A stretch of DNA of 64,000 nt from Mizuhopecten yessoensis (taxonomy: Eukaryota), in NCBI RefSeq assembly GCF_002113885.1, contig NW_018408629.1, positions 2,251,971-2,315,970 of the forward strand, in the 5' to 3' direction. Numbering within the stretch: position 1 is the first letter of the stretch; every line of letters begins with the position of its first letter. The notes below the pieces were generated by a model, which made no database searches, was not told where the DNA came from, and saw nothing but the letters and a program-made list of their open reading frames with translations. The translations under genes were made by a program, and so were the position numbers. Below are positions 19,395 to 63,638 of the stretch, piece after piece.

Positions 19395-21364
19395 ATTTTA
19401 TTGTCATGTGATCAATATGGTCCAATCATATACGTTGTTATAAGGTATAATAAAGTTGGCTGACTGTAGAGACAGTATTTCTATATTTCAGTATCAGCCA
19501 TTCAACAATAAAGATATCTGAACACCGAGCCGAGGCTAAGCCAGAGGTATGGTAGGGCCTCTTGGGCATGGCATTTGTTTTTAACAAATTAATGTGACGT
19601 TTGACAAGAAGTAGTATTCTCTCCTCCATTCTCTAGCTTTCATGTCTCATTAATTGTTTTTCCATTTAAATAACCAATGACATTTTGTCCTTACATAACA
19701 ACAATTTCAATACTTTCTGTCATTTCGCTATCCTTCCCAGATGAGAGTAACATACGTGATAGCACCTTTAAAATATTAAATAGATATATTATGCAAAAAA
19801 TGCTTGTACACCGTGTCTCACCTCGAGATCTAGAAACCACCCAGACATCAAACCAGATGCCATTTGTGCAGAAAAACGGATTATTTTTCCTCGGAGCACG
19901 TGGTTTTGGCTCTGGTTTGTTGTGTGCCTTTACAACGAGTTGGATATCTGTTCATTTTCCGTTGTTGTCTAAAGTTCTTTTTTTTTGTGTATTGCCGATG
20001 TCGTACGCTTTTTTTAACGTTAAAACATATTCTATGAATCTGAATATTTGGTTTTACAAGAAATGAAAATGGTTGCAAAAATGTTCTCCTGACATAAGTA
20101 ACTTTTTTTTTTAATTAATCAATCAAACGTTTTTAAGGTTTATAAGGCTACACAAATCAAAAGTAAATGCATACATCATGCTGCTGGTTAATGTCTATAG
20201 GAGTGCTAATGGTGTTACTAGGTTTTACCGTCAAAACCATGAGTCAATTTCTACCGAATCAAATAAGTTCTGCCAGCAAGTCTTCTGTCATCTCTGCGTT
20301 TGGTGGTTTAAGATTTGGTAACTGAGTGACAGTCTTAATAAAATCAGGGGTAAGGAGAGAGTCTCCAGCGCCTCCAAATAACCGCCGCGAAGCATCCGGG
20401 TCCTCTCGACCAGGACGCCTTCGTAGGATTATGCTTGGGGATGTAATCCCAGCACGTGTAAGAGCTGGGTATGTGTCGGCAGGTGAAAACATCTGGCCAA
20501 GAACAGATGCCACTTCGGCAAACCTTTATGCTTACAGATGTGAAAGAAAGCGAGAATATCTTTTAACGTGTATTGGAATCACATAAAACACTGGTTTAGT
20601 GTTAATTGAAATAATTTGACTTCGACGAAATCCAGCAGAGAAGTGAGGCAATGATTATTAACAGTTTCCAACGTGTCACTCTCTGGGAAATGAACGGAGC
20701 ATACGGATTAATAAACACGATATACGAACTTTTAAGAATATTTACGGGGTTTCTGATGCTTAATCAGAGAAATACCTTGCCTTATGTTAGTTCTTGATAA
20801 TATCAGGGCTGTACAATCTCGCCATTGATGTTTCACCTGTTTGTAGTTTTGTTGGTTGGTTTGGTTGCTATAGGTTCCTGTTTCGGTTATAACTGTTTCG
20901 GTTATAACTGCCCCAACATATAAGTCAAAATGGTATGACGGTATATCTGTAGAAGGCCGACAGGAATGACTGTCCGAAGGTATATCCTCATTCCTCCATT
21001 CTCAACACGGACGTGAGACCAGCTACGGCGGACACTGTGCCAAAGTCGGTTTGATATTAACAGTTTCTTAAGAACCACTTAGAGATTGCTTGATTTTACA
21101 TCAGAACTTGATTATTGTAACGGTAAGATCAATAGTCTGGGTAACACCGATAGTTAGGCTTACACTAAACCGTTGAATTTTGGCTATATTAATGGGTTTT
21201 TTGGATGACACTAGACGATAAGGGGTTACACCTGCATGTTATGTTACAGTAACGATTGGGGGTAGAATTGATACCAAGGAAAACGCTGGTAGTTGGGGCT
21301 ACACTAAACGGTTGAATTTGGATTATCCAAACGGTTGGGGTAACATTTTTAACATTTTTATCTA

Positions 21365-41717: not shown

Positions 41718-41954
41718 GGGTGGTCGGGTGGCGCAGTGGATAGCGCACTTGCCTTTCACCAAGGCGACCGGGGTTCGATATCCCGATCGGATGTGAAAAG
41801 GTTGGGGTCACCTTTCCGATCACGTGGGTTTTCTCCGGATACTCCGGTTTCCTCCCACACTAAGACCCCCCATGCGCGAACATCCGAGCCAACAAGAGTG
41901 AAAGAGTTGAAATAACTTGTTTCATAATTGTTGTTAAATAAATAAAGTTTATAT
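41718..41954 (+). mobile_element. tRNA-derived V-domain SINE, family B, full-length with TSD
   Basis: A box TGGCGCAGTGG, B box GGTTCGATATCC, V domain gtgggttttctccggatactccggtttcctcccaca; 16-bp TSD atttaaattcaaatat at 41700-41715 and 41955-41970. Confidence 0.92.
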
Positions 41955-42425: not shown

Positions 42426-42601
42426 ATCATATAGGTATCTATAGATGACACAGTGCAAATACTATGCTTAAATAGTGTCTCCGCGGACCTTATTGCACTG
42501 TCTCAGAGTTCCTATTTCGTCTACGAGTATTTAAGTTAAATGTTTTATTTAACTTATCTGAGATCTTTCTGATTTTAATTGTTTCAGAGGAAGCTTTAAG
42601 G

Positions 42602-42653
42602 ATGCTGTGGCCACTATGCCTGTTTCTGTCGGTCACATTTGCTACATCAAACG
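42602..42653 (+). CDS. Signal-peptide exon of the neuropeptide precursor (exon 42588-42653)
   Basis: ttgtttcag| acceptor at 42587; aggATG at 42602 gives MLWPLCLFLSVTFATSN+G; the phase-1 donor G|gttggt joins the phase-1 acceptor at 59595 to give ...ATSNA/SIYY. Confidence 0.75.
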
Positions 42654-45600
42654 GTTGGTATATTTCTTATCGAAAAATAATCTACTTATCTTGACATTTT
42701 AGAGCATTTTGATCCACTGCCATATTTGTGGGTGCCCACTGATATCTTTAGTTTCCCCTTCTTACTTTGGCGCTATGTTATATGCGTCATATCTGATTTG
42801 CTAAATGGAGGTTATTGTTTTGTAAAACATGCCACACTTGTGTTGTGTTTTCTGTCGCAATCAATTTACAATATCGTATTATGCCGCAAAAGCAAAATTT
42901 ATTTCCAAACCACCAACGTTTAGCATTTTGATACATCGCAAAACACTCTATCAATAGATTTGTTGAAATATTAAACTGCAAACGAAATTATCTGCGACAA
43001 AATATTCAACATCAAAAGTTTCTGTCAGTAGAAGCTCCCCTGATCTCCAACCATCCAGCTAAACAGGCTTTTTATGTTTAACTCTATTTTAAGATTTCAT
43101 TCATTGAATGTCCATGGTGATTGTTAAATAATTTTGTAATACATTTTAAGCCATGTTGTTAAGCTTATTTCTGAAAGATCTTACATATTAACATCAGAAA
43201 ATCAATAATGTACTTGCATGTTTTTAAATCATAATCCATAAATAGTGTATTTTATGGTCCCGCTATCATTTGCAGTAACGTAATAGTAAAACCTATGACA
43301 TGTATACATATAGAAAGAATTAATTATGTCATGATATAATCTGATATTACTACAGTATAGAGTTTGTTAAACTCATTTATAGAATCACAAGTTCACTAAT
43401 TCAAATCAAAATTGAGCGTACGCCAGACTAATATGTTATAGCTTATAAAAATAATTTTTAAAAGAATGGTCTATTTCTTATACAGCATTCTATGGCTGTT
43501 TCATTAACAAACTTAGTCGATGTCCAGATTTGTTTAGCATGACAGTTAAAAATGTGGGACAGATACGAGTGTGCGTGATATGCGCGATAAACAAAGTGTT
43601 ATCTTTGACGACAGATAAATAAATCAGTTGCATTGCTTTAATTACATACATCTAAACCTCTACATATGACTACGCCACATGGTATTACCGAGTTACTAGG
43701 AATTTGCTTCGAGCACATAATTTTGTGGTATACATGCGAATAGGGTCCCACGTGTTTTAGACAGGTTGCGTGTTTTTTAATCATGAACTGTTATATAAAT
43801 ATTTACCGCTTACTTACATATACCATTCATTAGTGATAACATGCTATTAAGAGCGTAGATATACTCGATGACTTTATTCTAAAGTAGGAAAATGCCTTGT
43901 TGCATGAACATGTGATGTTGCACAGAAATATATATACAGAGATTAGCCATATATCGGCGTACGATTAAATACACACGACGCATACCAATTATCACAAGGA
44001 ATGCCAACTAATAGTTGTTTCCATGATTTGTAAAGGAAAACTGATTTCTTTCCTAATCTCAAAGTAAGATGGGCCCGCTGTGGGATAGTCCCGATAGAAC
44101 GGAGGTCTGCCCCATACTGCTTCACTTGGAATTGCATGTCGGATACAGCTCCGATCGAATGAGCTCTATAGGATTAGGACATGGGGAGCAAGTTGGTTTG
44201 CTTAAAATACTCTTCTTATCAGACAACCAAGATCTCATATCGCTAAAATAAACGTCAAGGCGGGATTGTTGGAAGCACAGTAAGCTTTAAGTTTTGTTAA
44301 CGAAGGTTTTCAAATACGTGTAATATTTTCATTATTGTTAAAATCGAGTATGAAAACTGTATGCGTCATGAATTTGGATGCTCTTTTTAAGACATAAGCC
44401 CTGAAAACACTTCTGAAAATATCAGAAAATATTTTCTCCTTTATTTTCGGTAAGTTGACGATGCTTCTAATAATAAGACGTAGGGAGTATTTTTGTGAAG
44501 ATTGGTTGAATTAAGTCATATTTGTGTACTTTATCAAATGAGAATTTTCCGAATAAGCTCATTGAGAACAAAATCCCTTGAAATTTCCTCGGATTTTGGT
44601 CTTAAAAAAGATCTTTCGTTTTATACCCATACATTACAGTACAGTGCACACGTTGTCTAAACATGTAGTACACAAGTCTCACTTGGATTTAATCATTTGT
44701 TTCGATGCTTGCCTTACAGATCTTCACCTCTTTTAAACAACATGCTTCAAGTCATAGATATTACGCGGGATATTCGCTACAGCGTTATTTTGCCAAAAGC
44801 ATATTATCGACATATTTCTGCGAGGTTTTTGTAATCACGTTTTCTTGCGAGATAATCTTCGCGCATATTGCAAGATATTTGTTTTGCATTTTTCTGTGAG
44901 TTATTTGTCATTGCGTTATTTACTATCATGCTATTTTGCAAGATATTTATTTCGTGTTATTTTGCAAGATATTTATAATTATTGCATTATTATGCTACCT
45001 ATTTACCATCGCTTTATTTCGCGAGAGGAAACGATCGCCAATTCAGATACGTAACAAATATAACTATATAACATATAAAAAAGCATATAAATAAATAATT
45101 ATTTTATTGGTACACACACAATACATACATACAATCCATAGACACGAAATGAGTAACTATAATAAAACTTAGGTTATAAATATATGATTATTTTAGTGTT
45201 ACACATACAATACATAGAAAGCTTCCTCTAATAACACGGTAAAGTTAATATAAATCTTCGATATTCCTATTCCTATCTTTAAAAGAGAAACTCGCCGAGA
45301 TATCTGGACAAGACTGATCACCACCCAACGAAGAAACCTTTGGTTTTGCTGACTTTGAAACGGAAAATGTCATTGCATTAATTTTAAAGATGATACATCT
45401 TGATACAACTGATATCCGGTGCATTTACAACTTTATCATAGTGCGCCATTTCGCCAATAGTATTACGACTGCCTAAGTAATTGAGACCGTATCATTTTAT
45501 TTTAAGACAATTCCTACGGATTGATTCATGTACGAGCATCTTGTGGTATGTTCTAATGTTAAAACTACATTACATTACTATTCGGGTATTTGCGATTTGC

Positions 45601-48600
45601 GTGACACAGGGTAATTATTAATTTATTACACATTTAGTAGGACAGCTATTGATCTTAACTCATAGTAAATAGTCATCGCCTTGTTTGACCGACCAGTAAA
45701 GGTGTAAATTGTTCCAAGGATTCCGATAAACAAACGTATCGCTTGCAACACGTCATGTAAGTGCTACATTAAATATGTCACATGAATCATAATTATACGC
45801 AATGGAAAGTTAATGGAATCTGTTTCTACTTAATGCAGTTTAACAGGTCGATTCATCGGTACGGTTTGAAATCTGATATGATGATAATGATTTCATTACA
45901 AACTAAAAGCTATAGAAAGTAAAACCGACTGGCTCATTGAGAGTTGTAGTTTTGTTTCTCTCTCGATGTATTTGATATAGAGATGAACTGATACACAAGG
46001 TTGTCCCTATGGACAGATATCTGTTGTGAAATATCGTGTACTGTTATAAAAAAAATGGAAATCTATGCCAAACAAGACAGCCGTCCCTGAATTAGAACAT
46101 CATATCATGTACCATAAAATAAATTTCTACATTCTACCAATTGATATTCTCCAGGGAGGACTGGTTCGTATCAGCTTTGTTTTTCAAATTATGGTAAAAA
46201 CCATTTGAACGAAGTAACAAAAAATAAAATATCCATCACATAAAAATGTTTCCAAGATAAAAATAGTTTTGTTTGTCATCAAAAAATGATCGCATATCTC
46301 CCAATATTTGTTTTCACTACAAAAGTAATATTAACTTTTAATCAGTTCATGCTAACGTTTACTTAAAAACATGCATCCTTAGATACGTACTTTTATATAC
46401 TGTGTATCAAATATTCGTGAGTACTTTATTTCGCGGATTTACGTTTATAACTATTTCGCTGATACAAATTCTCATTGTCTGGCGGAAGTTTGAGCCAATT
46501 TTTTTTTTAATCTTTTCTACCCCTTTGGAAATATGCCATGACAAATTTGAAGGCTCTATACACAGGTACACTTCTGGATTCCTGTCTTTGACTAAAGTTG
46601 TTGGAAGGGTGCAGCAAGACTCTGTGTAAAGTCCTGTATACAAAACTCCTCTGTAATTGTCAAAATAGAATAGTCTAACAATTTGTCATATGTTAGTACC
46701 TGAATTCGATAGACAAGTTCCACAATTATTAAAGTTTCTGACCGCTGCATCGTTTCGAACCACTATTATCTTTCAAACTATTTATACATTCTTTGTTGTA
46801 ATGACTGTTCACGTGAAAGCCAAGATTAAGCGGACAGAGCTTAGCTTTATTTTTAGACTTGTCATATACAACACATAGAAACAATGTGACACTGGTTAGC
46901 TTACATTCCTTCTGAATAGATTTTTCAGCGGTTTATAACGCAATGAAATTGATTCAAAATATCATACTCTTTCTTTTTATATATATAGTTTTTAATGAAT
47001 TACATCAAGAAAGGCCTGTCCATTATATTGAAGAATACAAATCAATCAGGGACACCCATCTTAGAATAACAAAGTATACTATGGAATGTCCTTTGTACAG
47101 TCGCATTAGCAGCTGATGTTGAATAGAAAGTGAAACAGTAGGATTACTGGCACTTAAAAGAGAAATATTCCCTAAAACACATGGTAGATAATAGAAAAAC
47201 TGGCTAAAAGGTGGCTGTATTAAAGCAGATCGGTTGCAACTATGATATTTTAACGGACACAGACAGTGTTGAAACATGACCGTTGCCAATTTTCTTTTGT
47301 CGGTGTTTCTTCCCGAGTTGATGTAGTGTGTGGTGCAACAAAAATGTCATTATTTGTGTAGCTGTTAAAATCATTGTTATCATACAGGACGTCAATTTTC
47401 TCTAAAGCATCTACTTTTCGTGAGTAAATATTATTTATAGTAAAGTTATTAATTTCGCGAAATAATCAATTATTGATTAAATGTAGTTCTATAATAATAT
47501 ATACCTCACTAGATATGATTCAGAATGGGTGTGTATTAAGACGATAAAAAATGTGCGTTCATTTTGGGACATTTTTTAAATTTCATATGGCGAATTGTCA
47601 AACTAACAGAGCTTTGAACAATAGGGACTTTCCGTCTTGTTGAAGGGACATGTACCGCTAACATCGAAAATCTATTCGTAACCCCTCGGGACTCTAATGA
47701 CCCCGCATTGTGTGTAGATCCTTCAGATTCTGCTATACTTAATACATGGTTTACAAAACGCTATTTGTATTCAATGAATATATTGAACGCTTCAAGATAG
47801 CTCCATGCTGATATACAATCATATCATCAATAGCGGATATACATATTGTCATGACAACATCTGAGGTCCGAAAACAGTCAGGATTTATTTGGTGTTTGTT
47901 ATGTTTTGGGAATAAAAATATAATAGAAGCTTTAATTTTAACCAGGCTGTACACGTGTAATAACCGTATCTTAGACGAGGAAGTGTTCTTTGCAAAGTAT
48001 TAAAACTTGCATGATTCGTGTTGAAATATAGTGACATTGGAGGTTAGAAATATTTATCTTATATATATATTAACAAAAACGTAGTTATATGATTATGATG
48101 AAATAAAATGCACTCGTGGCTTCAGGGATGATCATTACATGATGTGCTTCATGTTATTCAAGACTAACCACATAACATGCAGAATTCACAGAGAATACAA
48201 CGCACTAAATAACAATGTCCCAGGGCATTATCCTCAAACTGAGATGAGATAAATGTGTCCGGTCTTTTTCTGTCAATTCCGGTCGTCTAGTCCCAACATC
48301 CGGTAAGCAGGACATAAGAGGTTGAAACAAACATTGATGAATTTAGATGTGGTAATAGTGTGAGCGTATGGTAGAGTTAACCAATACAGACTTGTTTACG
48401 AGGATCGCTGGGCCCTAGCCTAAAGTGCTTCCGTAGATCTAGACAAAATCAGCCCTTCTTTTCAAGTTGATGTCGGCACTATTACAAACAGGAATATCCA
48501 CACAAGCATAAAAATGTACGTAAAGGTTATCATGGAAGGTANTGATATACATAGTTCAAAGTACAATAAGGCGGTGGATCAATGACAGCCGCAAAAGGTT

Positions 48601-50265
48601 GCGCAAACTTGGGGTATATCGCTTCTTTCTCCATCTTTTAATTTTTGCTTCATTTCTTCCCCCCCCCCCCCATTTTTTCAAAACGAAAATTAAAATTCTT
48701 GCTACTTTAAACACTGACCTTACGTTACGTTCAGGTCTTTAATTCCATGTCTGTACTTACGGTGCTTGTCAGTAAAGGGGATACCGCTTTTACCCCTCCC
48801 CATCCCATGTTTTTAAAAAGTTCGTTAACTAAGATGAAACAATCATATCTCTCTCTCTAACAACCGTATAGTTTGATGATACAGAACCCAACAGAAGAAT
48901 ATAGGGAAGCCAGTAGTGTTAATCGACTGCCAGAAGGGATGATAAAGTATAATAATGGTTTGGATAAGGAATAATTCCTAACATACAGAAGCCACCTTAG
49001 TCACATCTAAGTGGGACGCAACGGTTTACTCGTGTGGAGGAGTGGGCGGACAGGTGTTCGATTCCAAATACCTAGAAATATACATCAAAATAAGTTTCAT
49101 GTTCAAAAGTACCCCTTCCGTTCTTATTGGTTATTTGAATGACGAACCGGGAGTAATGAAACCGTGTTCTGTTTATGTCTGCAAAACTTATTTAATAATA
49201 TACAGTTAATGAATAGCTAGTTCTTTCATATTAATCAATAGCTCCATAATTTGAAATTAAAAGCATTAATATTCTTTTACATGTCATAAAACGGTATTTA
49301 GCATACGACTACGTAATTTCTTTTGATGCGTAAATGATATCGACCCATGATTGCCTTTGATTTATAATTATTTTGGTTAAGGAAAAGTGTGTAAACTTTA
49401 CGGGTAGGGCCGATCTGTTTACAATGTTATAGATTTTTCTTCAATTAACATTCGTATTTCCGGTTCCGCCTCGAGTACTGTCTGTGTTTTGATACACCCA
49501 CATTATACCCAGTATACTGTATTTGAGGTTTTAAATACTTTTTCGATTGCCGAAGGGTAACACTTCAACTGCCCGTATTTACCCTGATTTAAATATCCCA
49601 TTAACGACGAGACATGGTTAATCAATACAATCATCAAGAGCTTCCACGAGACGAACATTATATATCGATGTGCCCTGACAGTGTGTAAATTTTTCCGCGT
49701 GTCCTAACACCATAGACCATACCCCCGCCTACCAACGCACAAGTTGAGACAATCTTGAAAAAATATTAATTATTTGAAATCATAAAAAGGATGGTCAAGT
49801 TTCCTTATAGATCCTCCTGCTTCCACTTATCTTTCTCATTTCTTCACTGTTTCTCTACAAATTTATTGATTAGACTGGTTAGACGATTGCTTGATTGTAA
49901 ATATATACTACCTTGTTACATGAACAAATTAAATAGTTTGGCACAACTGGCGGCCAATCCCTTTGTAAATATGAATGCAATCAAATTTGTTTAAATTAAA
50001 AACCACACAAGTTATAGCTGTTATATACAGAGAGGTCACTATACACTTTTAAAATTTTGTAATAGACACACAGTATACCAAAATCAATTACAATGCATCA
50101 TACAGCTGTTTCGTCCATCTAGGACTCCTCGTTTTCTTGGAACCCTTTAACTTATAAATGACACAACTCAAAGGAGACAAATGTGGCCATCCAGGCTACA
50201 TCAAACCTTGTGGACTAAAAATGAGAAAAGTCTATCACCTTGTAGATTGTGAGATGAACGTAACA

Positions 50266-51881
50266 CACAAACACAGGTGATACAAACACAGGTGATACAA
50301 ACACAGGTAGTACAAACACAGGTGATACAAACACAGGTAATACAAACAGGTGATACAAACACAGGTAATACAAACACAGGTAATACAAACAGATGTACAA
50401 ACACAGGCAATACAAACACAGGTGATACAAACACAGGTAATACATACACAGGTAATACATACACAGGTGATACAAACACATGTGATACAAACACAGGTAA
50501 TACAAACAGGTGATACAAACACAGGTAATACAAACAGGTGATACAAACACAGGTAATACAAACACAGGTGATACAAACACAGGTAATACATACACAGGTG
50601 CTACAAACACAGGTGATACAAACACATGTGATACAAACACAGGTAATACAAACACATGTGATACAAACACAGGTAATATAAACAGGTGATACAAACACAG
50701 GTAATACAAACACAGGTGATACAAACACAGGTGATACAAACACAGGTAATCCAAACACAGGTAATACAAACAGGCAATACAAACAGGTGATACGAACAGG
50801 GGATACAAACACAGGAAATACAAACACAGGAAATACAAACACAGGGGATACAAACACACGTAATACAAACAGGTAATACAAACAGGTGGTACAAACAGGT
50901 GATACAAACAGGTGATACGAACACAGGTAATACAAACACAAGTGATACGAACACAGGTAATACAAACACGAGTGATACAAACACAGGTAATACAAACATG
51001 CGATACGAACACAGGTAATACAAACACAAGTGATACAAACACAGGTGATACAAACACATGTGATACCAACACAGGTAATACAAACACAGGAAATACAAAC
51101 ACAGGAAATACAAACACAGGAAATACAAACACAGGGGATACAAACACACGTAATACAAACAGGTAATACAAACAGTTGATACAAACACAGGTAATACATA
51201 CACAGGTAATACAAACACAGGGGATACAAACACACGTAATACAAACAGGTAATACAAACAGGTGATACTAACACAGGTAATACAAACACAGGAAATACAA
51301 ACATGTGATACAAACACAAGTAATACAAACAGGTAATACAAACACAGGTGATCCAAACACATGTGATACAAACACAGGTAATAAAAACACAGGTGATACA
51401 AACACATGTGATACCAACACAGGTAATACAAACACAAGTTATACAAACACAGGTAATACAAAAAGGTGATACAAACACAGGTAATCCAAACACAGGTAAT
51501 ACAAACATGCGATACGAACACAGGTAATACAAACACAGGGAATACAAACAGGAGATACAAACAGGTGATACAAACAGGAGATACAAACAGGTGATACAAA
51601 CAGGTGATACAAACACAGGTAATACAAACACAAGTGATACAAACACAGGTAATACAAACACATGTGATACAAACACAGGTAATACAAACAGGTGATACAA
51701 ACACAGGTAATACAAACAGGTGATACAAACACAGGTGATACAAACACAAGTAGTACAAACACATGTGATACAAACACAGGTAATACAAACAGGTGATACA
51801 AACAGGTGATACAAACACAGGTAATACAAACAGGTGATACAAACACAGGTAATACAAACAGGTGATACAAACACAGGTGAT
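50266..51881. repeat. 13/15-bp minisatellite, ~110 copies (intronic)
   Basis: Units acacaggt(g/a)atacaa and acaggtgatacaa; source of the CITCV/VFVLP ORFs. Confidence 0.97.
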
Positions 51882-54800
51882 CAAATAAGTACAATTGATC
51901 AATCCAACACTTCGTGGTTACTAAAACGTTGAATGTAGGAAAAAAGTTGGGTTCATTGTAAATTGTTTCCAAATTACATTCATGCAGGATCAGAAAACAT
52001 ATTGCTTAGAATGTTGATACAGAATTGTTACAATTCTGTTGGAAGATGGATAATATAGACCGACTTAAATGATTAGACTGATAAATAACTCAATGTTGTA
52101 ATAAATATTTATGAGTATGTATGAATTATTTAATTTATTAATAGCAACTGAACAATTTAAGATTTTGTTCAAAGAGTTGATATTCTATAAAAACTCATCA
52201 TGGGCAGATACACCTTGCTATTGTAACTTCACAAGAGGCTTAAGTTCGTGATTCGATGGGCTGTTCAGGCGAATTAATTGACACTTATATAAATATTTCG
52301 TGATTGACAAAATATGTTTTTGCATAACTTCTCATAAGATCCGACTCCAGCGACCGGAAGAGCTGGTAATTCTAAAGTACGATAATGGCAACTACCATGT
52401 ATTGACTTGATGTCTAATGTTCGTGCTAATAACTACTAACATTAATAATTAATGATTTCGTTCTGTCTCAGATGTTGCAATGCTTGATGTATACGCCCAC
52501 AACTTCTTAATTGCTATCGTGAAATTCATATAAACAGTAAAATCGTCATAGACCCATCTTGCATTTTGGAAGGCCATTTATCATTCAATGGTAATTTAGC
52601 TTCTTTCGGTACCTCCATTGGTGATTAAGGAATCCCTTTGACTATTCAGTGTCAATAAAATATGTTTAAAATTAAATCAATCGATTGGTGTTGAAAAGGC
52701 CATATTTTTTGCACGAATTAGTAGTGTTTTTGTAGATTATTCCAGAAACAAATTCAATTTGTGAATGCTGACCGAAGTTAGTTATGATTTTATTCTTGTA
52801 TCACTCCTGTCTTCAACTTTTATATTACTATTGAGTTAAAAAAGGTTATGTATAAAACATTCAACAACAACAACAACTCCATCCCCAAATAAAAAACCCA
52901 ACAAAAACAAACAAAAACAAAAACGGAAAGATGAACCCAAATCTTTGTAATGAAACACCATGAACCGTCTGTTGATTTCTTACAATCTAATTGTTAATGA
53001 TATTAATTGTTTTAAGTCTGGATCTGGTATTTGTACCGAGATTGCTTATGTATAGGGTTTTTATGCTTCTACCACCTGTTTATTTATAGACAGTGCTTGT
53101 ACAGTTCAAGTTTGATTTCCTACGAAATATATCAACGAATCTGTAAGACCTCAAGCCACCCAAAGGACGATTTTGTATTTATTGTCGCATTTCAGCTATC
53201 CTATGATATATGTTTGACTGTTAAGTTTCAACAAACTAACCAAAGATGGTATAATCACCCAATTGTTCAACATTTTGATAAGTTATATTTTAACTCTAAA
53301 TTAAACATGAAAATTCAGATTTGTAATTTTGATAAATTGCGCTTTTACTCAAAATTTTCAAAATGGTAATGGAAGCGACGTTAACTAAATGTAGTGTAAG
53401 GCATGAGGGCCGGTGTTCATAATGACATGTCTATCTCTTTATCAACCTAAAGGAATGCTATGAAGTGACATATTACATATCATCTATATACTAAGATCAT
53501 GTAGCGCTTATTTTCTGTTAATAGCCTTGGAGATAGAAACTGGCTTCAAACCAAGATGGTTTCGGCTTTGTAAACCGGCAAAATTCAGTGTGAAATAAAT
53601 GCTCTGTTAAAATATTGTATCGGTACAGCACATGTACTTTACAACAAAGAGCCTTGTGACCGTAATAAATAAGATAACCTATACCGTGTCCTTTTTGTAA
53701 CATTCAGTGTTACAAGCTAGGCATGCTTTAACATTATAACCGTTATGTTAAACAGAATGTTATGTGGTACATTATTTTAAGTTCATCGTAAGTGCTTATG
53801 TCATTTTCCTGTGTGTAAACTGTTTATTACTGCCTGTTGCCCAATTCCTTTGTATCTAAAATCTTAACAATAAATATTCTGAAATGAAAATCTTAAGTTC
53901 AATTCATTTAGCATTCCTATTCTTATCCACAGTTTATTATGATTTAAGTTGTTATTGCATTGCCACGTCCATCTTGATTTGAGACCGGTATGCCTCTACA
54001 GAGCTTGTAAAAAAGAAATTAAGCTCCACATTTTTAAGAATATCATCTTGTATCATTCAGTTGGTTCTCAAAATCCATTGCTATGTCCTTAATGCTGGTG
54101 AACTATTTTTTTGTGAAGATATCAGCTTTAATGCTTTTATTATTGTCTACGTTATTGACGATAAGTACCATTTTAGTAACTATGGTGAAAAGTCAATGTA
54201 TCAAAATTGAATACCTGACTTGTAGTATTTGTGACTTATAACGGGGTTTAGGGTGAATATACTATATGTTAGGGCTTCTTGGACATGAAGGGAAAAGTCA
54301 TTCCCTCGACGTCAAGATTACATATTGTTAAACTCAGCTGCCATTGTGGTCAGCTTTGCCATTGTGGTCAGCTTCTACATCGCGTGTATATTTTGGGGAT
54401 CTTGTTCTAGACCCTCTTTGCAGCATGAATCGATACTCCACTGAAAAAGAAACGCATAAAGAAATGTTTCGATACAGCTACTTCTCATCTATAACACACA
54501 CACATCGCCAGCTTCGATCTATTTGTGGTCTTTGAATCCTGTCACCAGCAGAGAGCCAATCGAATCCGGCGATTGATGAAATTGGCATCCCTGTTATTAT
54601 TCGGTTCGACCTTATAATTAAGGACGGGGCCAGTTATTCTTCTCTTTTTTGGCGTCCCTTCGTATTATATGGTCTGCCACGAACATTCAAACTATATAGT
54701 TGTTAATTATCATAGACTTCATATTATAAGTATATTTTATCATTTCCTGGACCATAACACAGCGAAAGACATCTCTTTCAGATGAATTCTGTGGAAACCT

Positions 54801-55355
54801 ACCCTTGCTAACAATAGAATTAATCATTCTTATGACGTGGGAATGAGTCTCTTCAGGAAATAGAATTAGCACAACCGAATCTATAATTAATGGCTATGTT
54901 TATGTATATGACTCTGGTTATGAGATATGAACAATATATATTGATGTTTTTCACAACATGAATCTCATAACTTGACGGGACTCCAATATGTATTCATTAG
55001 CATCGGCAAGTGCGATTATCGATGACAGTTTACCTTAACGTAATATCGACAGTGAATAACATCGCTCTAGAATTCATTATAGAAGTATGAGGCGTGTTTC
55101 AATAGAAAGTAGTATTGTGACGTCATCATGTGATAACTGACTAACTGGAAGTGAGAAAGACTCCGAAAATGGACTGGTTGAACGAAAAACTCAGCCAAAG
55201 TATCGGTTGCTGATGTACTTTCCTGCATGAAACAGACATTGTGTGTGGTATCTCTCCAGAATACAATGCTCAATTTGTCTTTTCTTTATGTCAGTTTATA
55301 GTGACTTTTTGGTGTCACCTTTGGTGCTGTTGCTGTCATTTCTTGTTGCCTTTAA

Positions 55356-55438
55356 CCCTTACACCACTGTAGACCATACTGGACTCATCCAAATAAATAC
55401 AAGGTAGAGTCTATTAAAGTTACCTAGGGTTGAAAGGG
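55356..55438. mobile_element. 83-bp TTAA-flanked mini-transposon (piggyBac-like ends)
   Basis: TTAA|CCCTTACACC...GGTTGAAAGGG|TTAA; a related truncated copy lies at 6851. Confidence 0.75.
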
Positions 55439-58400
55439 TTAATCGAGACCCGATGTTGTCCTTGTACGTATACGAAACATCATCGAAATTCCATTGGTTA
55501 CGCTGACTTACGTTCTCTGCACTCCTGGAACATGGCATGGAAACATCGATAGCACACGGTTAGTTGTTTGACTGGTTTTATGTAAAAAAAAACACCTCAC
55601 TAATCGCTATGCTTATACCTAGCCGTTTTAAGATTTCAAAGAGCGACATCCGACGTCAAAGCAAGTCAATTTTAACGTTATGGTGCCGCGCGATTCTGTT
55701 GATGTACAAAACAAAGTATCAAACTTGTCTTTTGGAAGCATTCACAAGGTAATGATTACATAACCATCGATTACATCATGACATATTCCAGGAGTGCAGT
55801 GAACATGAGAGTGCTTAACACCTGAGTTTTAAAAAACAATGGTAATTAGTTGGTTTTGGGCTGATGAACTGCTATGTAATGTAGCAATATGGTAAATCGA
55901 CTCATTTTGTCGGAAAACTGTACACAATTCTACTTGATAATGAATGAGTTTATAGACGGCCATATTGAAAAAACAAATTAAGTATTAAATTTCGTCAATA
56001 TTACTAGGTGATAAATATTTTGTCATTTTGGGATGTATACTTTCACGTTTTACTATTTTTTCATGAATATATACCAACTATGATCAGGATATACGAAATT
56101 AGTCATTAGTTGTATATATCAGTCATTAATAATACACATCACACTCATACCACATAACACTAAGCAGTAAATACCGTTTGTACTCTTTTTGATTCATCAG
56201 TTCCTGTGTGATCTTTCCATACCAATTTTGTCCCCGCGTGTTGACGCGGTTGTACATTGTTTATACGAACGTTACCCTTTTATAATAAGTCCGTTTTTCC
56301 AAATAGCGATGTCTTCAATTACACTTGATGTAGGATCAGACACAACTAATCTCCACTTTATATAGGAATATAATATGAGTTGAAGCCACTACAGACCGTC
56401 TATGAATCATGTAACATGGCCTTAACAGATTTCAAATAAGGCTATCCATTTCATATTTATATCAGTTTGTATTGCGTGCTAGACTTAACACTGAGCTTTA
56501 AATCAATAGCAATTACTATGAATATAATTGGACATAACATTGGATTTGATTTCAGAACAACAATTCACATTTTGTTTTGAATAAGTGTTGAAAACGATTA
56601 ATCATCTGTTGCTTTGATTACAGGTTGTTTAATGCAAATGGGCATACATCTTTATGCTACATTCCTAAAATGAGTTTTAATATACATGCATATAAGGACT
56701 ATGTTGTTCTAAAACGTATTTTAACGGATCGTAACATATATTCAACATACGGCTATTAAGACATTATTTCCATTTATTTTCAGTTTTTTTTCACATTTTG
56801 ACATTTCTTGTAATGTATTAAAAGCGGAATATCTAACAAAAGAACAATCGCATATACTGAGAGCAATGAAATTTCATTGTTTATTCATTCGCTTCAAAAT
56901 CTATCCCAACTGCACATGACATGAAATCGCACAGGAATACTTTCAAATGCTAGAATTCGCAGTCTTTCGTTTACACCCAGGAGTAAAAACTCAGTTAGGG
57001 GAATGAATAAAAAACCCACTTGGAATGATATAATGAAACCCCTGTAGACTTATTATTCCATTCTAAGATGGCCAGCAGACAGACATCTTAAATTTCAAAA
57101 GTTAAAGTGGTTTAGCTCTTTTCTCAGAAAATTTCACGTGAAGGTTTCCCATAGTTGAGTATATTTAATCTTCGGACTGATTGTGAAACCAAGATGGCCG
57201 ACAGCTGATCATCAAATAGGAGATAAGATTGTTGTCACTATTTCTCAGACATTAGTTCAGGGCTCTTTCTCAAACTTCATCTTTAGGTTTCCCGTGGTTG
57301 GTCGTTGTGCACATTTCATTTTGATTAGCAAAATAAGATGGCCACCAGACATCTTTATTTTCGACAGTTCTAGTTTGTGTTTATTTCCCAAGACGTAATT
57401 GACAGGTCTTCCATAATATCAAATGTAGGTTTCCCTTGTTATGCATTAAACGCTGGGCTAGTAAATTGGCCAAAAGACATTCTCACGTTGAAAGAACAGT
57501 GTATATATATAAACACAGGACACGATATTGTTGCTGCGCCTCATCGTGCTCTGTTATATTTTTGTGTAATCTAAAGAACAAAGGGTTGACGGCTTTTAAT
57601 GATGGAGAACTATGTCATTGTATATAAATTGAGATATGTAGGTGTATTCGTTGGACTAGTGGCTTACGTTATCTGCATTTAAAAAATATGAGATTGGTAC
57701 AAGAATGATGACTATAAACACATTACGTGAAGAAATATGAAATGTCATACATATTTTGCTGGCTACAATTGAATTGAGAAAGGAATGTCAAGCAATGTTT
57801 GACAATAAAAAGAAGGATGATCATTGAAAAAGAGCACACATGTGAAATGATAATAGCATTTGTATGAACAAAAATATCGACATTATGATTTTTATCTAAA
57901 GATCTGAACATATTAGCCGAAGCAGACAGACGTTTAACTGGCTTTTATAGCACTTCGATCCTAATAATTTCTATATAGGAAACAATATTTTTGAAAATAT
58001 ATATGTTTTCAATCCGGACAAACAAAACCCCTCACATGTATGCAGACAAACACCCGTTGTAGACATGTATGTATATGTATCAATGGAAAGTTTATTTCTG
58101 ACTAACACAATGGTGTTTGTGTTTTATTATATTGATAAAGGCTAATAAAATTATAGGGCAAATGTTTTCAGCTGACATTCATACTATTTTTCTTTCATGA
58201 AGTGATTTATTCGCTCAATCAATATTTATTAGCGGTATTGCCAACAACCTAGATAGCCACTGCATAATATGAGCGGAGGATAATTGACCTTCTCTGTCAT
58301 GTTACATGATATCATATGAGGTGATTTAATTTAGTGCTCCCGGCGAAGTTGGTTGCCCTCTTCATAAACTGTTTACTGGTGGACATTAAAAATACAAAGC

Positions 58401-58926
58401 TGATCTGCTACACCTAGTTACACACGATGTCGTTATCTTTCTCTCTCTCTCTCTCTCTCTTTTTCCAGATAAAGAAATATGTGTACCATTTTAATCTATT
58501 CATTTAAAAGTCCAATACGGTTTCTATAGAAGCATATACAATAGAAAGACACATTTGTGCTAATGTTACAGTTCTAGCACAGAATTCATAAAAGATTTAA
58601 ACTAAAGTCAAAATGAATGTTTAAGATTTTTCAAGTCCAAATCACAATGTAATTTTGCATAGAAGCACATAAATGTATTGTAAATCTGAATTGCTGAGCT
58701 ACATGTGTACTGAGGAGAAATACCAAGGGAAATAGTTATTTTTCGACATCTGAATGTTTTAGTTAAGATTCAACAACAAGTAATAAGTAACCCCTTATTT
58801 CAACTGTCCCTAAAGTCATATTTAAAGACCTGGTTAAATATTTAATAGAAGATATTTAACTTGCATATATCTAACTGGGATATATTAAACTTGTACTTAT
58901 ACTTATTTAAATGGTACATAACGGCA

Positions 58927-59116
58927 TATTCCGTCTTTGCATATTGCAGAGTTATCTTCTCTTGAGAACAGGTATTGATTGTTACGTCACTTATTTAAGA
59001 GAGGAACGTCATCAATTTTTGTGAAAACGACGTAATTTTCTCACCCAAACCAATGACGTAACAATCAATACCTGCTCCCTAGAGAAGATAACTCTGCAAT
59101 ACGCAAAGACGGAATA
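58927..59116. mobile_element. 190-bp palindromic TA-flanked MITE
   Basis: Same family as 42236-42425; ~480 bp upstream of the main neuropeptide exon. Confidence 0.92.
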
Positions 59117-59594
59117 CTGAGTCTATGATAAGGCATTGCAATTAATTTCTTCAAAAAATAGATCATCGGCATTATAACATGGGAATCTCTTTCGCAACCC
59201 ATTTGGTTACGAAGTGACATTTGTTTAAATAATTAAAGTTGAAGCTCAGTACATCAAAATTGCATTTATGAATTCCAATGCTTAAGTGGGTTTTTTAATT
59301 CGTTTTGTAACTCATCATTGGTTATAGTGACCATATCATCTTTAAGGGAGCTTGTTGAGCCTTAAGTTTAAGACATTTAAATGATCCTTGGGACTTTTTT
59401 TATAAATACTACACTTCAATTCAGTTCATATCTCTAAAACAGATTAACATTTTTTTTTAAAAAATGATCAAGTATTAGTAAAGGTACATGTTAGTTAGTT
59501 TGATGTAAGTTTGTATTTCATTATTATATCATATTTTACTTCAATTCGTTCTGCGATCAAAAGTTTCATTTTCTCTATATGATTGTTTTTGCAG

Positions 59595-61369
59595 CTTCAA
59601 TATATTACGAAGATAACAGAGAACATATACTGGACCAGGGTGTCGAAGAACCAGGAAGTTCAGACGGAGTTGTAGACGACGGACCATACAGTTTCAAAGA
59701 ACGTCCAGAAAAAGATGAAGGCCTTACCTATGCACCCCGCTATTATGCTCAATTTCCGGTTGACGATATGGAACAACCGGTTGTGATTGGAGGAAAAGGT
59801 TACACATTTGGTAGGCGTCCAAATGTATACGGAGGATATGGACTTGGCAAACAAAACGGACAACAAGACGAGTATATTTTAGACGATGGTGAACCCTTAT
59901 ATAACTTCAACGACCGTGGCAATAAAATGGCGACTAACAAGAGATACTTTGTGTTTAGAGGAGGGAGACATCAGCTTGGGAAGAGACCATTTGTTTTTGG
60001 AAGTGGTGGATACTTTGGGAAAAGAGACGACGACGACGATACTGACGATAACAAAGCTACAGTAAATAAACGGCCATTTGTGATGAGGGGCGGTTACAAC
60101 TTTGGAAAAAGGGATTCCGGTGAACCTGGAGAAACGCTACTGAAGCGACCATTTGTCTTAAGCGGTGGCTATAATTTCGGAAAACGTGACAACGATGAGG
60201 ACCGTGTACAAAAGCGACCGCTTGTTCTAGGTGGAGGTTACAAGATCGGTAAACGGCCTTTCATATTAGGAGGTGGTTATAAGTTTGGAAAACGCAACAT
60301 TGACGACGGGGAACAAATTAACACGATCAAAAGATTATTCGTCTTAGGAGGAGGGTATAAATTTGGCAAAGGACCATTTGCATTTGGTAGTGGATACAAA
60401 TTTGGTAAAAGAGAAGTTGGGGATGACGATGTACAAAAACGACCATTTATTCTAGGAAGTGGCTACGATTTTGGTAAACGGTTCTTTGCTATGCGCGAGG
60501 GACATATTTTTGCAAAACGTGACATGAAGAATGATGAAGGCAATGAAATAGAGAAAAGGCCGTTTGTTTTAGGAGGAAGATACAAATTTGGGAAACGTCC
60601 ATTTGTCTTTGGAAGCGGATATAAATTTGGAAAGCGTGGCATGGGCGAGTTTGAAGACGATGAAGAAATTGAAAAGCGGCCATTTGTTCTTGGAAGTGGT
60701 TATAACATTGGGAAACGTCCATTTGTTATGCGAGGTGGTTACAATTTCGGCAAACGTGGTCTAGATAATGAAGGTGACATAGTGGAAAAACGACCATTTG
60801 TGTTTGGAAGCGGCTACAAATTTGGAAAACGTCCATTTGTACTTGGAAGTGGCTATCAATTTGGTAAACGAGCAGATCCGGAAACAGAAATTGAAAAAAG
60901 ACCGTTTGTGTTGAGTGGGGGGTACAAATTTGGAAAACGTCCATTTGTGCTAGGAGGCGGATACAAATTTGGCAAACGCGCTGACATGGCCAAAGAAGTC
61001 GAAAAACGTCCCTTTGTGTTAGGTGGCGGGTATAAATTCGGGAAACGACCATTTGTTTTAGGAGGCGGATATAAGTTTGGAAAGCGTGATAACCAAATGC
61101 ATACATCTGCAGGAGAATCTCTATCAGAAGGCGGTAATACAGGCTTGGACACCATAGAGGAAATTACAAAACGTCTATTAGCATCCAATTACAACTTTGA
61201 AAAACGCCCATTTACGTCTAGTAATTCATTCAAACTTGGTAAGCGCGATCCCGAGATAACAGACTTCGAGGCAGAAACTACCAATGACGAACTGCACAAG
61301 GCGGATAACAGCAATGATCTCAGCCAACATCCTACCGTAAATAAGAGAAGTACCATACTGAAGGGTTAG
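59595..61369 (+). CDS. Main exon of a multi-copy amidated neuropeptide precursor (PFVx7amide type, e.g. PFVLGGGYKF-NH2)
   Basis: tttttgcag| acceptor; 591 codons to TAG; about 20 KR-[P/L/F/Y]F[V/I/A]xxGYxF-G-KR units separated by acidic spacers. Synonymous codon variation between identical peptides indicates a real coding sequence. Confidence 0.95.
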
Positions 61370-63638
61370 AGCTTGATCGAGGTTATTCCGACACACATAA
61401 ATCCCGCATTCAAAAGAGATCTCTTCTCGGCGATTGGTAAAAAATGTAACGTTTTTGCATTTCAACTTCCGGAAACAGAATATTCTATAAATTAAAAAAA
61501 AAAAAATGAAAATATGTGATGTTGCAAACTGTCTTTCTTTCAAAAAGTAGGAAACAAATAAAAAACGAAAACAGTTTGAGAAACGGCGAGCCGCCATTGA
61601 TGTGTTTCTTGTCTATTTCTGGAGAAAATAGATATTGAATGATTTACCGTGCCACTTTGACATCATACGTAACGTCAATAAATGCACGTGAGCGTATTCC
61701 TGGTGAAAAAATAGGTCATATTACTGAGCCGATTGTAAATGGACAGACATAGTATATACGTTAATCTCGCAGACTGTTATGTTAGTGCTTCAACAGACAA
61801 GGAAACGTCCCACGCCCACGAATTCAAAGCTGATGAAAAGAACAGACTGGCCGTCAGATATCTTTGTGTCTTTCGTGTGTGTATGTGTATGTTTCCAGAC
61901 AATGTTCAAAGATGTTGTAGTCAGCTATTATACATTTGTCGACGTAGACGAACGATAAATTGATGAGACGATGCTGACTCATATGCTATCAGTTTGTTTA
62001 GCGAGGTTGGAACCGTAAAACTAATTAATAAGATTTTGTCATTTTTGGAATTGATAGTGAGAAATTTCATTACTGTAAAAGTATCTGTAATAAAATTTCA
62101 TTTTGGATTGAAAACATAATAAGTATCATAGTTCAAAGGATCTTTTATCATGTAATGTTAAAAGTAAAGCATGCATCTTAAAATGTGTAAACGCAAAAAG
62201 GCGTCTTATTTCAATAGTATAGCATTTCATTTCAAAGAAACATTCAAACATGTAAAGACGGGAAAGACTTTTGGTGAATTATACCTACACAGTGATGGGG
62301 GTGGGTGGCACTTTATTTTTTCTAATTTCCGATCAATCGTTTTCGTGTCAGTATTGCACTGTTCATGCAGCTCATAAGTGTTCATTGGTACCTTCCATGT
62401 CTGGTAAATCATTTAGACTTGCTAAGCACGATGATTATCATGTGTTCATTGGTACCATAGATCTTCGCAAACTCTTTAGCAGATGAGCTATTAAATCCTC
62501 TACCTAGGGGATTTACTATCAGCCACAGACAGTAAGAAACTTTGAACAAAGAAATGTTCATAGGTGTATGGCAGTCGTGTACACTCCGTAAAGTGAATAT
62601 TCTATAAACTCCTTCTTTGGTTAAACATTATGGTAAAACAACTGTTTATTTGTGTAAATCCTAGCTACAAGATTAATCAGGCATTCAATGAGGTTAGTCA
62701 AATACTTTTTTAGAGTCGACTGACGTCTTTTCCGACGTCTATAGAAAATCCTGAACAGAAATTGTTATACGCATTAAGCACTTGGATGCTTTGCTATTTT
62801 TTGTTCCAGATGATGAAAATTCAGATAAGTTATAGTCTATCCTATAAAATAGTTTAATTCATCTTTGTTAAAATTTACAGCCTGATTATTTTGTCAAGTT
62901 ACCTTCTTTCGTATATATATATATTTTTGGCATTTTTCATTAAATGTGGGACTGCTAGTTAATGTGCAAAGTGAATGCTGCCGTGTGCACAGTATATTCC
63001 GGGAAAGGTTATATTGTACATTTTATTAATAGGTAAAGGTTAAGTGTTTATTGACTTTAGTCCATGTTGTTATTTGTTGTTTGGATAATTTCAAATAGTT
63101 CTTGTTTATGTGCTTGTGGATATTTTTTTTTTTTATGTTTTCGTGATTTTATCACAAGTATAAGTGAATATTTCGAACTTTTATGTTTTCAGTGTTGAAA
63201 GGCGTTTCTCCGAAAGGACCAACACTGTCTGGAAAAACTGTTGACAAGTATGCATTATGATAGTTTAAGGTTTGGTTGTTATCCCATGAAAACATCGCCA
63301 TGGCAATCATACGAGTCGACTCTGTAATAACTCTGATACTCGTTAAATAAATTATTTAATTATTAAATTATTAAAAAGTATTCAATTTTGATCATTTAGA
63401 TATGGTATTTGAACTTTAAAGCTAAAAGTGCATCGCATTGTCAACGGAAACAGTGTTTCGTAATTTCAAAATATTTTCTCCCTTGTTGAGTTCGTAATAC
63501 TATATTGAGTACTTTGAGTATCCCCTTGATAGGGAAACACATATCAATTATAAAATTTTGTCTTAGATATGCTAGTAGTGCTTTGATAAATTATTGTATT
63601 TTTCCAAAATATGTCTTTGTTTTCGTTAACATGAAATG

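What the first reader, a model, noticed from the sequence alone, without database searches (positions are those of the whole stretch)
42588..59594. Hidden 66-bp signal-peptide exon 17 kb upstream completes the precursor
The track ORF (MIVFAAS...) has no signal peptide, and its first codons overlap an acceptor (tttttgcag|CT, phase 1). At 42588-42653 there is an acceptor, an ATG and a phase-1 donor. Splicing gives MLWPLCLFLSVTFATSNA|SIYYED..., with a hydrophobic core and an S-x-A signal-peptidase site, for a 608-aa precursor across a 16.9-kb intron. ORF-only annotation would mis-start this gene and miss that it is secreted.
Basis: partly seen in the sequence, partly recalled or inferred. Interest (0 to 1): 0.7.

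Follow-up and report, generated by a model that had tools for sequence, protein, structure and literature searches.

The report
Known scallop neuropeptide gene's signal-peptide exon
The small exon 17 kb upstream really does supply the signal peptide of this scallop neuropeptide precursor, but the complete N-terminus was already published in 2018 from ganglion RNA, so this is a correct and ordinary gene-structure call, not a discovery.

Summary
Observation and interpretation are both confirmed, and the result is already known. ATG 42602, a phase-1 GT donor after 42653 and the phase-1 acceptor 59594|59595 are all present. Joining them gives a 608-aa protein starting MLWPLCLFLSVTFATSNA|SIYYED.

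Sequence alone could not pick this exon. A stricter scan finds about five signal-peptide-like phase-1 loci upstream, and the control strand gives as many.

The literature decides it. Zhang et al. 2018 (PMC5996578) list a Yesso scallop precursor "PFVx7a" (GenBank MH045244, genome model PY_T16467, RefSeq hit XP_021370506). It came from a de novo Trinity assembly of nerve-ganglion RNA and begins with exactly this N-terminus. It differs from the window at several residues, so it is independent of this assembly. Their LC-MS/MS found nine peptides, six of them amidated, and all nine are encoded in exon 2.

Mussel and pearl-oyster relatives share the plan of a signal-peptide exon, a phase-1 intron and one big exon. 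Their introns are 0.4-0.9 kb, against 16,941 bp here.

Whether exon 1 is the first exon stays open. The scan lists this same stretch as read before; that is the same DNA, not other DNA.

The parts
42588..42653 (+). The start codon is at 42602, and the CDS 42602-42653 gives 17 codons plus 1 nt, the signal peptide MLWPLCLFLSVTFATSN(A). The 3' end (donor ACG|GTTGGT) is fixed by the published protein. The 5' end is not established.
   Evidence: sequence and frame. (published transcript-derived protein starts with these residues joined to SIYYED). (single copy in the genome).
42528..42552 (+). Two TATTTAA motifs (42528-42534 and 42546-42552), 50-74 nt before the ATG. They are possible TATA boxes if exon 1 is the first exon. 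This is inference only, because such motifs are common in a genome that is 64% A+T.
42654..59594 (+). Phase-1 intron of 16,941 bp with GT...AG ends, rich in repeats and with no credible nested gene.
50267..51885 (.). 15-bp minisatellite (about 112 copies) inside the intron. It creates spurious ORFs of up to 557 aa on the minus strand.
   Evidence: (no Pfam family).
58927..59116 (.). About 190-bp near-palindromic interspersed repeat (MITE-like) inside the intron. Many copies in the genome are 92-97% identical. The rival exon candidate 58911-58971 lies mostly inside it.
   Evidence: 39 loci scored out of 7302 first-look candidates for the whole intron, each matching on both strands. (rival candidate).
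59595..61369 (+). Exon 2, the rest of the CDS (590 codons plus stop TAG at 61367-61369). It has a non-repetitive N-terminal spacer followed by about 18 KR-flanked PF[VI]x7-Gly units, which yield amidated decapeptides.
   Evidence: (nine LC-MS/MS peptides, all found in this exon). (homology to bivalve precursors).
61491..61562 (+). Candidate polyadenylation signals (ATTAAA at 61491, AATAAA at 61557) 120-190 nt after the stop codon. Not tested.

Best explanation
The window holds the Yesso scallop (Patinopecten/Mizuhopecten yessoensis) gene for the PFVx7amide neuropeptide precursor. Its coding sequence is split into two exons. A 52-nt coding piece (42602-42653) encodes an 18-residue signal peptide, whose last codon is completed by exon 2. 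A single 1.8-kb exon (59595-61369) encodes the spacer and about 18 copies of PF(V/I)x7-Gly flanked by Lys-Arg. The two are joined across a 16,941-bp phase-1 GT-AG intron. The signal peptide directs the 608-aa precursor into the ER. Signal peptidase most likely cuts after Ala18, which is essentially at the exon junction. Prohormone convertases then cut at KR, carboxypeptidase removes the basic residues, and the C-terminal Gly is converted to an amide. This gives decapeptides such as PFVLGGGYKF-NH2. Shown: the exon 1-exon 2 junction at protein level in ganglion RNA, and the mature amidated peptides by mass spectrometry (both from the literature). Inferred: the exact signal-peptidase site and the position of the transcription start.
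For: The splice arithmetic is exact, with canonical GT and AG. PMC5996578 Suppl. Fig. S1 gives PFVx7a starting MLWPLCLFLSVTFATSNA SIYYEDNREH.... That sequence comes from a Trinity de novo assembly of nerve-ganglion RNA-seq. It differs from the window at several residues (for example GVVEPG vs GVEEPG, QPIVIGG vs QPVVIGG, RGDKMA vs RGNKMA, TLQKRP vs TLLKRP), so it was not derived from this assembly. Table S1 gives GenBank MH045244, positive de novo (NpSearch) and homology calls, genome gene PY_T16467, and best nr hit XP_021370506 at E = 0. Table S2 lists nine LC-MS/MS peptides, six of them amidated, and all nine are encoded in window exon 2 with the expected flanks. Relatives keep the same plan of a signal-peptide exon, a phase-1 intron and one large exon: Mytilus californianus (intron 763 bp), M. 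trossulus (about 0.9 kb) and Pinctada imbricata (about 0.4 kb). Exon 1 is unique in the genome.
Against: The junction is supported at protein level from a supplementary PDF read as text. I could not read the nucleotide record MH045244 or the RefSeq model. No signal-peptide predictor was available here, so the cleavage site rests on the -3/-1 rule, on the paper's use of SignalP 4.1 and NpSearch, and on a break in the extracted text. The donor ACG|GTTGGT is only moderate by a crude weight matrix (score 4.0).
Confidence: 0.95

Rival explanations
1. A different upstream exon supplies the signal peptide, and 42602-42653 is a chance look-alike. Candidates include 54083-54197, 45556-45610 and 58911-58971.
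For: Sequence scans find several look-alikes on the + strand, and as many on the control strand.
Against: The published transcript-derived protein carries the 42602-42653 residues, not those of any rival. 58911-58971 lies mostly inside a high-copy MITE-like repeat. 45556-45610 has an Arg in the middle of its hydrophobic core.
Confidence: 0.02
2. Translation starts at the ORF's own ATG (59579), giving a 596-aa protein MIVFAAS... with no signal peptide, from an unspliced or differently started transcript.
For: The ATG is in frame and opens the longest ORF.
Against: That ATG lies inside the polypyrimidine tract and AG acceptor of the intron. The published protein does not contain MIVFAA. The peptides are cleaved at KR and amidated in vivo, which requires entry into the secretory pathway. 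All relatives have N-terminal signal peptides.
Confidence: 0.01
3. The published N-terminus is a Trinity assembly chimera that happens to join an unrelated fragment to the precursor.
For: De novo assemblies do produce chimeras, and the published contig is incomplete at its 3' end, ending ...PFVLSGG without a stop.
Against: The joined fragment maps 17 kb upstream on the same strand of the same scaffold. It ends exactly at a GT, meets an AG in the correct phase, starts with ATG and encodes a signal peptide. Relatives have an intron of the same phase at the same place. A chance chimera would not satisfy all of these.
Confidence: 0.02

Closest known systems
PFVx7amide precursor of Patinopecten yessoensis (Zhang et al. 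2018, PMC5996578; GenBank MH045244; gene PY_T16467; RefSeq hit XP_021370506 'protein PRQFV-amide-like')
   Same: This is the same gene. The N-terminus is identical through the exon junction, the repeat units are the same, and all nine reported MS peptides are encoded here.
   Different: There are a few amino-acid polymorphisms between the two sequences. The published sequence is truncated at the 3' end (it ends ...PFVLSGG), while the window gives the remaining C-terminal part and the stop codon. The paper does not describe the exon-intron structure or the 16.9-kb intron.
PFGx8amide neuropeptide precursors of oysters (Stewart et al. 2014, PMC4200219), represented here by Pinctada hits P0004 and P0006
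   Same: They are multi-copy, KR-flanked, Gly-terminated peptides that begin with PF. Sequence similarity is significant at E = 6e-28 and 6e-20. Zhang et al. equate the two families. In Pinctada imbricata a phase-1 intron also follows the signal peptide.
   Different: The unit is PFG plus 8 residues instead of PFV plus 7. The Pinctada intron is about 0.4 kb rather than 16.9 kb.
Mytilus uncharacterized proteins LOC127710777 (M. californianus, P0007) and LOC134680613 (M. trossulus, P0008)
   Same: They share RPFV...GKR-type repeats with about 29% identity. They have the same two-coding-exon structure with a phase-1 intron after a short signal-peptide exon.
   Different: Their introns are 0.76-0.9 kb. 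Their repeats are more degenerate, and exon 1 encodes 27-28 codons rather than 17.
Phase-1 introns next to signal-peptide cleavage sites in genes for secreted proteins (general knowledge, not tested here)
   Same: The signal peptide sits on its own small exon, separated from the mature part by a phase-1 intron.
   Different: Nothing beyond the intron's unusual length compared with the bivalve relatives.

Membership tests
PFVx7amide / PFGx8amide bivalve neuropeptide precursors | N-terminal signal peptide | tested here: met
   The spliced N-terminus MLWPLCLFLSVTFATSNA has a 12-residue hydrophobic core and Ser at -3 and Ala at -1. The published precursor has the same residues and was accepted by SignalP 4.1 and NpSearch in PMC5996578. 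No predictor was run here.
PFVx7amide / PFGx8amide bivalve neuropeptide precursors | Many tandem copies of PF(V/G)x7-8 ending in Gly and flanked by dibasic cleavage sites | tested here: met
   Splitting exon 2 at KR/RR gives 19 short Gly-terminated segments. Eighteen are of the PF[VI] type and 17 are decapeptides.
PFVx7amide / PFGx8amide bivalve neuropeptide precursors | Significant sequence similarity to described family members | tested here: met
   Pinctada P0004 at E = 5.6e-28, P0006 at 5.8e-20, Mytilus at 1e-17 to 2e-22. The match to the published scallop PFVx7a sequence is near-identical.
PFVx7amide / PFGx8amide bivalve neuropeptide precursors | Mature peptides are produced and C-terminally amidated in nervous tissue | not testable with these tools
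   This comes from the literature only. LC-MS/MS of scallop ganglia found PFVLSGGYNF-NH2, PFVFGSGYKF-NH2, PFVLGSGYQF-NH2 and others (PMC5996578 Table S2). I confirmed that all nine peptides are encoded in the window.
PFVx7amide / PFGx8amide bivalve neuropeptide precursors | Gene plan of a short signal-peptide exon, a phase-1 intron and a single large exon | tested here: met
   Window: 17 codons plus 1 nt, then exon 2. M. californianus: 27 codons plus 1 nt, intron 763 bp. M. trossulus: 28 codons plus 1 nt. Pinctada imbricata: phase 1.
Any curated protein family (Pfam) | Match to a Pfam model | tested here: not met
   No Pfam family at E up to 1 for the 596-aa ORF. This is usual for repetitive neuropeptide precursors.

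The most novel reading that the evidence does not exclude
The acceptor-like site at 42587|42588 may be real, so that exon 1 is internal and an undescribed non-coding 5' exon and promoter lie further upstream. The Pinctada imbricata model joins its signal-peptide exon to an exon about 15 kb upstream, which is a parallel. Together with the 20- to 40-fold expanded, repeat-filled intron, that would make this a much longer transcription unit than in other bivalves, possibly with alternative promoters. Nothing in my evidence excludes this, and nothing supports it beyond the acceptor motif and the Pinctada parallel.
Probability: 0.3. Interest if true: 0.15.

Novelty: already known. Interest (0 to 1): 0.1.

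Why it matters
It matters mainly as quality control. The precursor, its signal peptide and its mature amidated peptides were published in 2018 and linked to existing gene models, so no new biology follows. There are two small additions. The gene structure is now explicit: a 16.9-kb phase-1 intron where mussels and the pearl oyster have 0.4-0.9 kb. The window also supplies the C-terminal part that is missing from the published partial sequence.

Tried and rejected
The motif script began at 41900 and the genome search used 42654-59594.
2. A protein word search with the whole ORF found only distant bivalve relatives of at most 38% identity and no protein of the species itself. A search with the first 200 residues of exon 2 alone found nothing. 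Records of the window's own genome appear to be left out of those collections.
3. Pfam on the ORF gave nothing.
4. The largest intronic 'ORFs' (557 aa on the minus strand, 112 aa on the plus strand) have no Pfam family. The large one is a minisatellite artefact.
5. Sequence-only ranking of candidate signal-peptide exons could not single out the true one.
6. The scallop genome paper (PMC10970998) is not held, so I could not check the assembly statistics against it (after a mistyped search term).
7. Joined spliced model: I joined exon 1 to the first 80 nt of exon 2 only inside a local script, to check the frame, and printed 44 residues. I sent no joined model to any search, fold or look-up tool. 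Literature look-ups used short strings from each exon separately.

Full report
**What is in the sequence**

The finding's coordinates are exact. An acceptor-like tgtttcag ends at 42587, and an ATG lies at 42602. Seventeen codons (MLWPLCLFLSVTFATSN) plus one extra G run to 42653, followed by GTTGGT. At the other end, tttttgcag stops at 59594 and CT at 59595-59596 completes the split codon as Ala. The frame then continues as SIYYEDNREH into the long ORF, which ends with TAG at 61367-61369. A local script confirmed the phase (52 nt, remainder 1) and the total of 608 residues. The ORF-track start (ATG 59579, MIVFAAS) sits inside the polypyrimidine tract and acceptor, and carries no hydrophobic leader.

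**Is it more than chance?**

Not from sequence alone. A stricter scan required 14-30 codons, no acidic residue, an uncharged run of at least 8, small residues at -1 and -3, and a phase-1 GT. It left 13 candidates at about five loci: 7159, 20167/20191, 20828, 42602 and 54083-54131. The opposite strand, used as a control, gave 15, and mononucleotide shuffles gave 1.5 on average. The 141 bp around it are single-copy in the 988-Mb genome, which at least rules out a repeat.

**What the gene is**

Exon 2 encodes about 18 KR-flanked PF(V/I)x7-Gly units, for example PFVLGGGYKF-Gly three times. Pfam has no model for it. The word-index protein search found bivalve relatives: Pinctada proteins with PFGx8-Gly units (P0004 at E = 6e-28, P0006 at 6e-20), Mytilus 'uncharacterized' proteins, and one transcript-derived protein (P0001, 36% identity). 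Those relatives with complete N-termini, including all the Mytilus proteins and P0001, begin with an ordinary signal peptide, and P0006 carries one inside its annotated N-terminal extension.

**The decisive evidence**

Zhang et al. 2018 (Front Genet 9:197, PMC5996578) sequenced nerve-ganglion RNA of the Yesso scallop Patinopecten (Mizuhopecten) yessoensis and assembled it de novo with Trinity. They list 63 neuropeptide precursors.

- Supplementary Figure S1 contains 'PFVx7a', which begins MLWPLCLFLSVTFATSNA SIYYEDNREHILDQGV.... Those are the residues of 42602-42653 joined directly to those of 59595 onward.
- The figure legend says predicted signal peptides are highlighted. The break in the extracted text after ...SNA fits an 18-residue signal peptide that ends at the exon junction. 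This is my inference from the text layout.
- The published sequence differs from the window at several positions (GVVEPG vs GVEEPG, QPIVIGG vs QPVVIGG, RGDKMA vs RGNKMA, TLQKRP vs TLLKRP, KRPFVLGGGYKI vs KRPLVLGGGYKI). It therefore comes from other individuals and is independent of this assembly.
- Table S1 gives GenBank MH045244, positive calls by both homology and NpSearch (which requires a signal peptide), genome gene PY_T16467, and best nr hit XP_021370506 'protein PRQFV-amide-like' at E = 0.
- Table S2 lists nine LC-MS/MS peptides from this precursor, six of them C-terminally amidated. All nine are encoded in window exon 2 with the expected flanks, R before and GKR after. Cleavage at KR and amidation happen only in the secretory pathway, so secretion is shown experimentally.
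- The authors equate PFVx7amide with the oyster PFGx8amide family of Stewart et al. 2014. Only three papers in the library use either name.

**Comparative gene structure**

- In Mytilus californianus (P0007, locus L001), exon 1 holds 27 codons plus 1 nt. It is followed by GT, a 763-bp intron, an AG and a single large exon.
- M. trossulus (P0008, L012) has 28 codons plus 1 nt and an intron of about 0.9 kb.
- In Pinctada imbricata (P0006, L011), the exon carrying MIPFYRVSSFILLISTFTVA... ends in phase 1 before an intron of about 0.4 kb. That exon has its own acceptor and is joined in the model to an exon about 15 kb upstream.

The phase-1 intron just after the signal peptide is therefore ancestral to these pteriomorph bivalves. 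The scallop differs only in intron length, 16,941 bp.

**What fills the intron**

There is no credible gene. The 557-aa minus-strand 'ORF' at 50201-51874 is the translation of a 15-bp minisatellite with about 112 copies at 50267-51885, and it has no Pfam hit. Searching the intron against its own genome gave 7302 first-look candidates. The scored ones are all copies (92-97% identity) of a near-palindromic element of about 190 bp at window 58927-59116, so the intron is full of interspersed repeats. The rival exon candidate 58911-58971 lies mostly inside that element.

**Mechanism**

The 608-aa preproprotein is targeted to the ER by the exon-1 signal peptide. It is cut most likely after Ala18 (inferred), processed at KR sites, trimmed and amidated. 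This yields about 18 decapeptide amides. Processing and amidation are shown by MS in the literature.

**What stays open**

The 5' end of exon 1 is not known. The exon may be internal, using the acceptor at 42587 as the Pinctada model does. Or it may be the first exon, with transcription starting after one of the TATTTAA motifs at 42528 and 42546. Those motifs are weak evidence in a genome that is 64% A+T.

I therefore have no junction reads of my own, and I sent nothing from those places to any search tool afterwards. The 18 runs that hold exon 2, in 10 studies, were only listed. The joined model was used only for a local frame check and was never searched or folded. Exon-wise short strings were used for the literature look-up.

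**Verdict**

Interest is low.

Noticed in passing
window 50267-51885: A 15-bp minisatellite (consensus ACAAACACAGGTGAT, about 112 copies, 83% matches) produces stop-free frames on the minus strand. It yields spurious ORFs of 557, 433 and 318 aa rich in Cys, Val, Ile and Thr, and strong AT skew (0.45-0.51).
   Followed up: yes
window 58927-59116: A near-palindromic interspersed repeat of about 190 bp (MITE-like). At least 39 other loci in the genome match at 92-97% identity, and each also matches on the opposite strand at about 80%. The whole-intron query returned 7302 first-look candidates. It lies about 480 bp upstream of the exon-2 acceptor.
   Followed up: partly
L011:3001-20120 (Pinctada imbricata, protein P0006): The annotated model joins an exon about 15 kb upstream (62 codons, MPGGLKQPLGV...) to the exon that carries the evident signal peptide (MIPFYRVSSFILLISTFTVA). 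The real start is probably the internal Met, and the upstream exon is either 5' UTR or a model artefact.
   Followed up: partly
window 61010-61369: The published PFVx7a sequence (MH045244, as printed in Suppl. Fig. S1) stops at ...PFVLSGG without a stop codon. The window supplies the missing C-terminal part, with further PFVLGGGYKF-Gly copies, an acidic and polar tail, and atypical last units (PFTSSNSFKL-Gly, STILK-Gly).
   Followed up: partly
window 20167-20317 and 20828-20900: Two strong signal-peptide- or transmembrane-like ATG-started stretches on the + strand (MHTSCCWLMSIGVLMVLL..., MFHLFVVLLVGLVAI...) came up in the candidate scans. They may belong to another gene's exons.
   Followed up: no
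They were left alone afterwards, so the region about 750 bp upstream of exon 1 was not examined for promoter or upstream-exon features.
   Followed up: no
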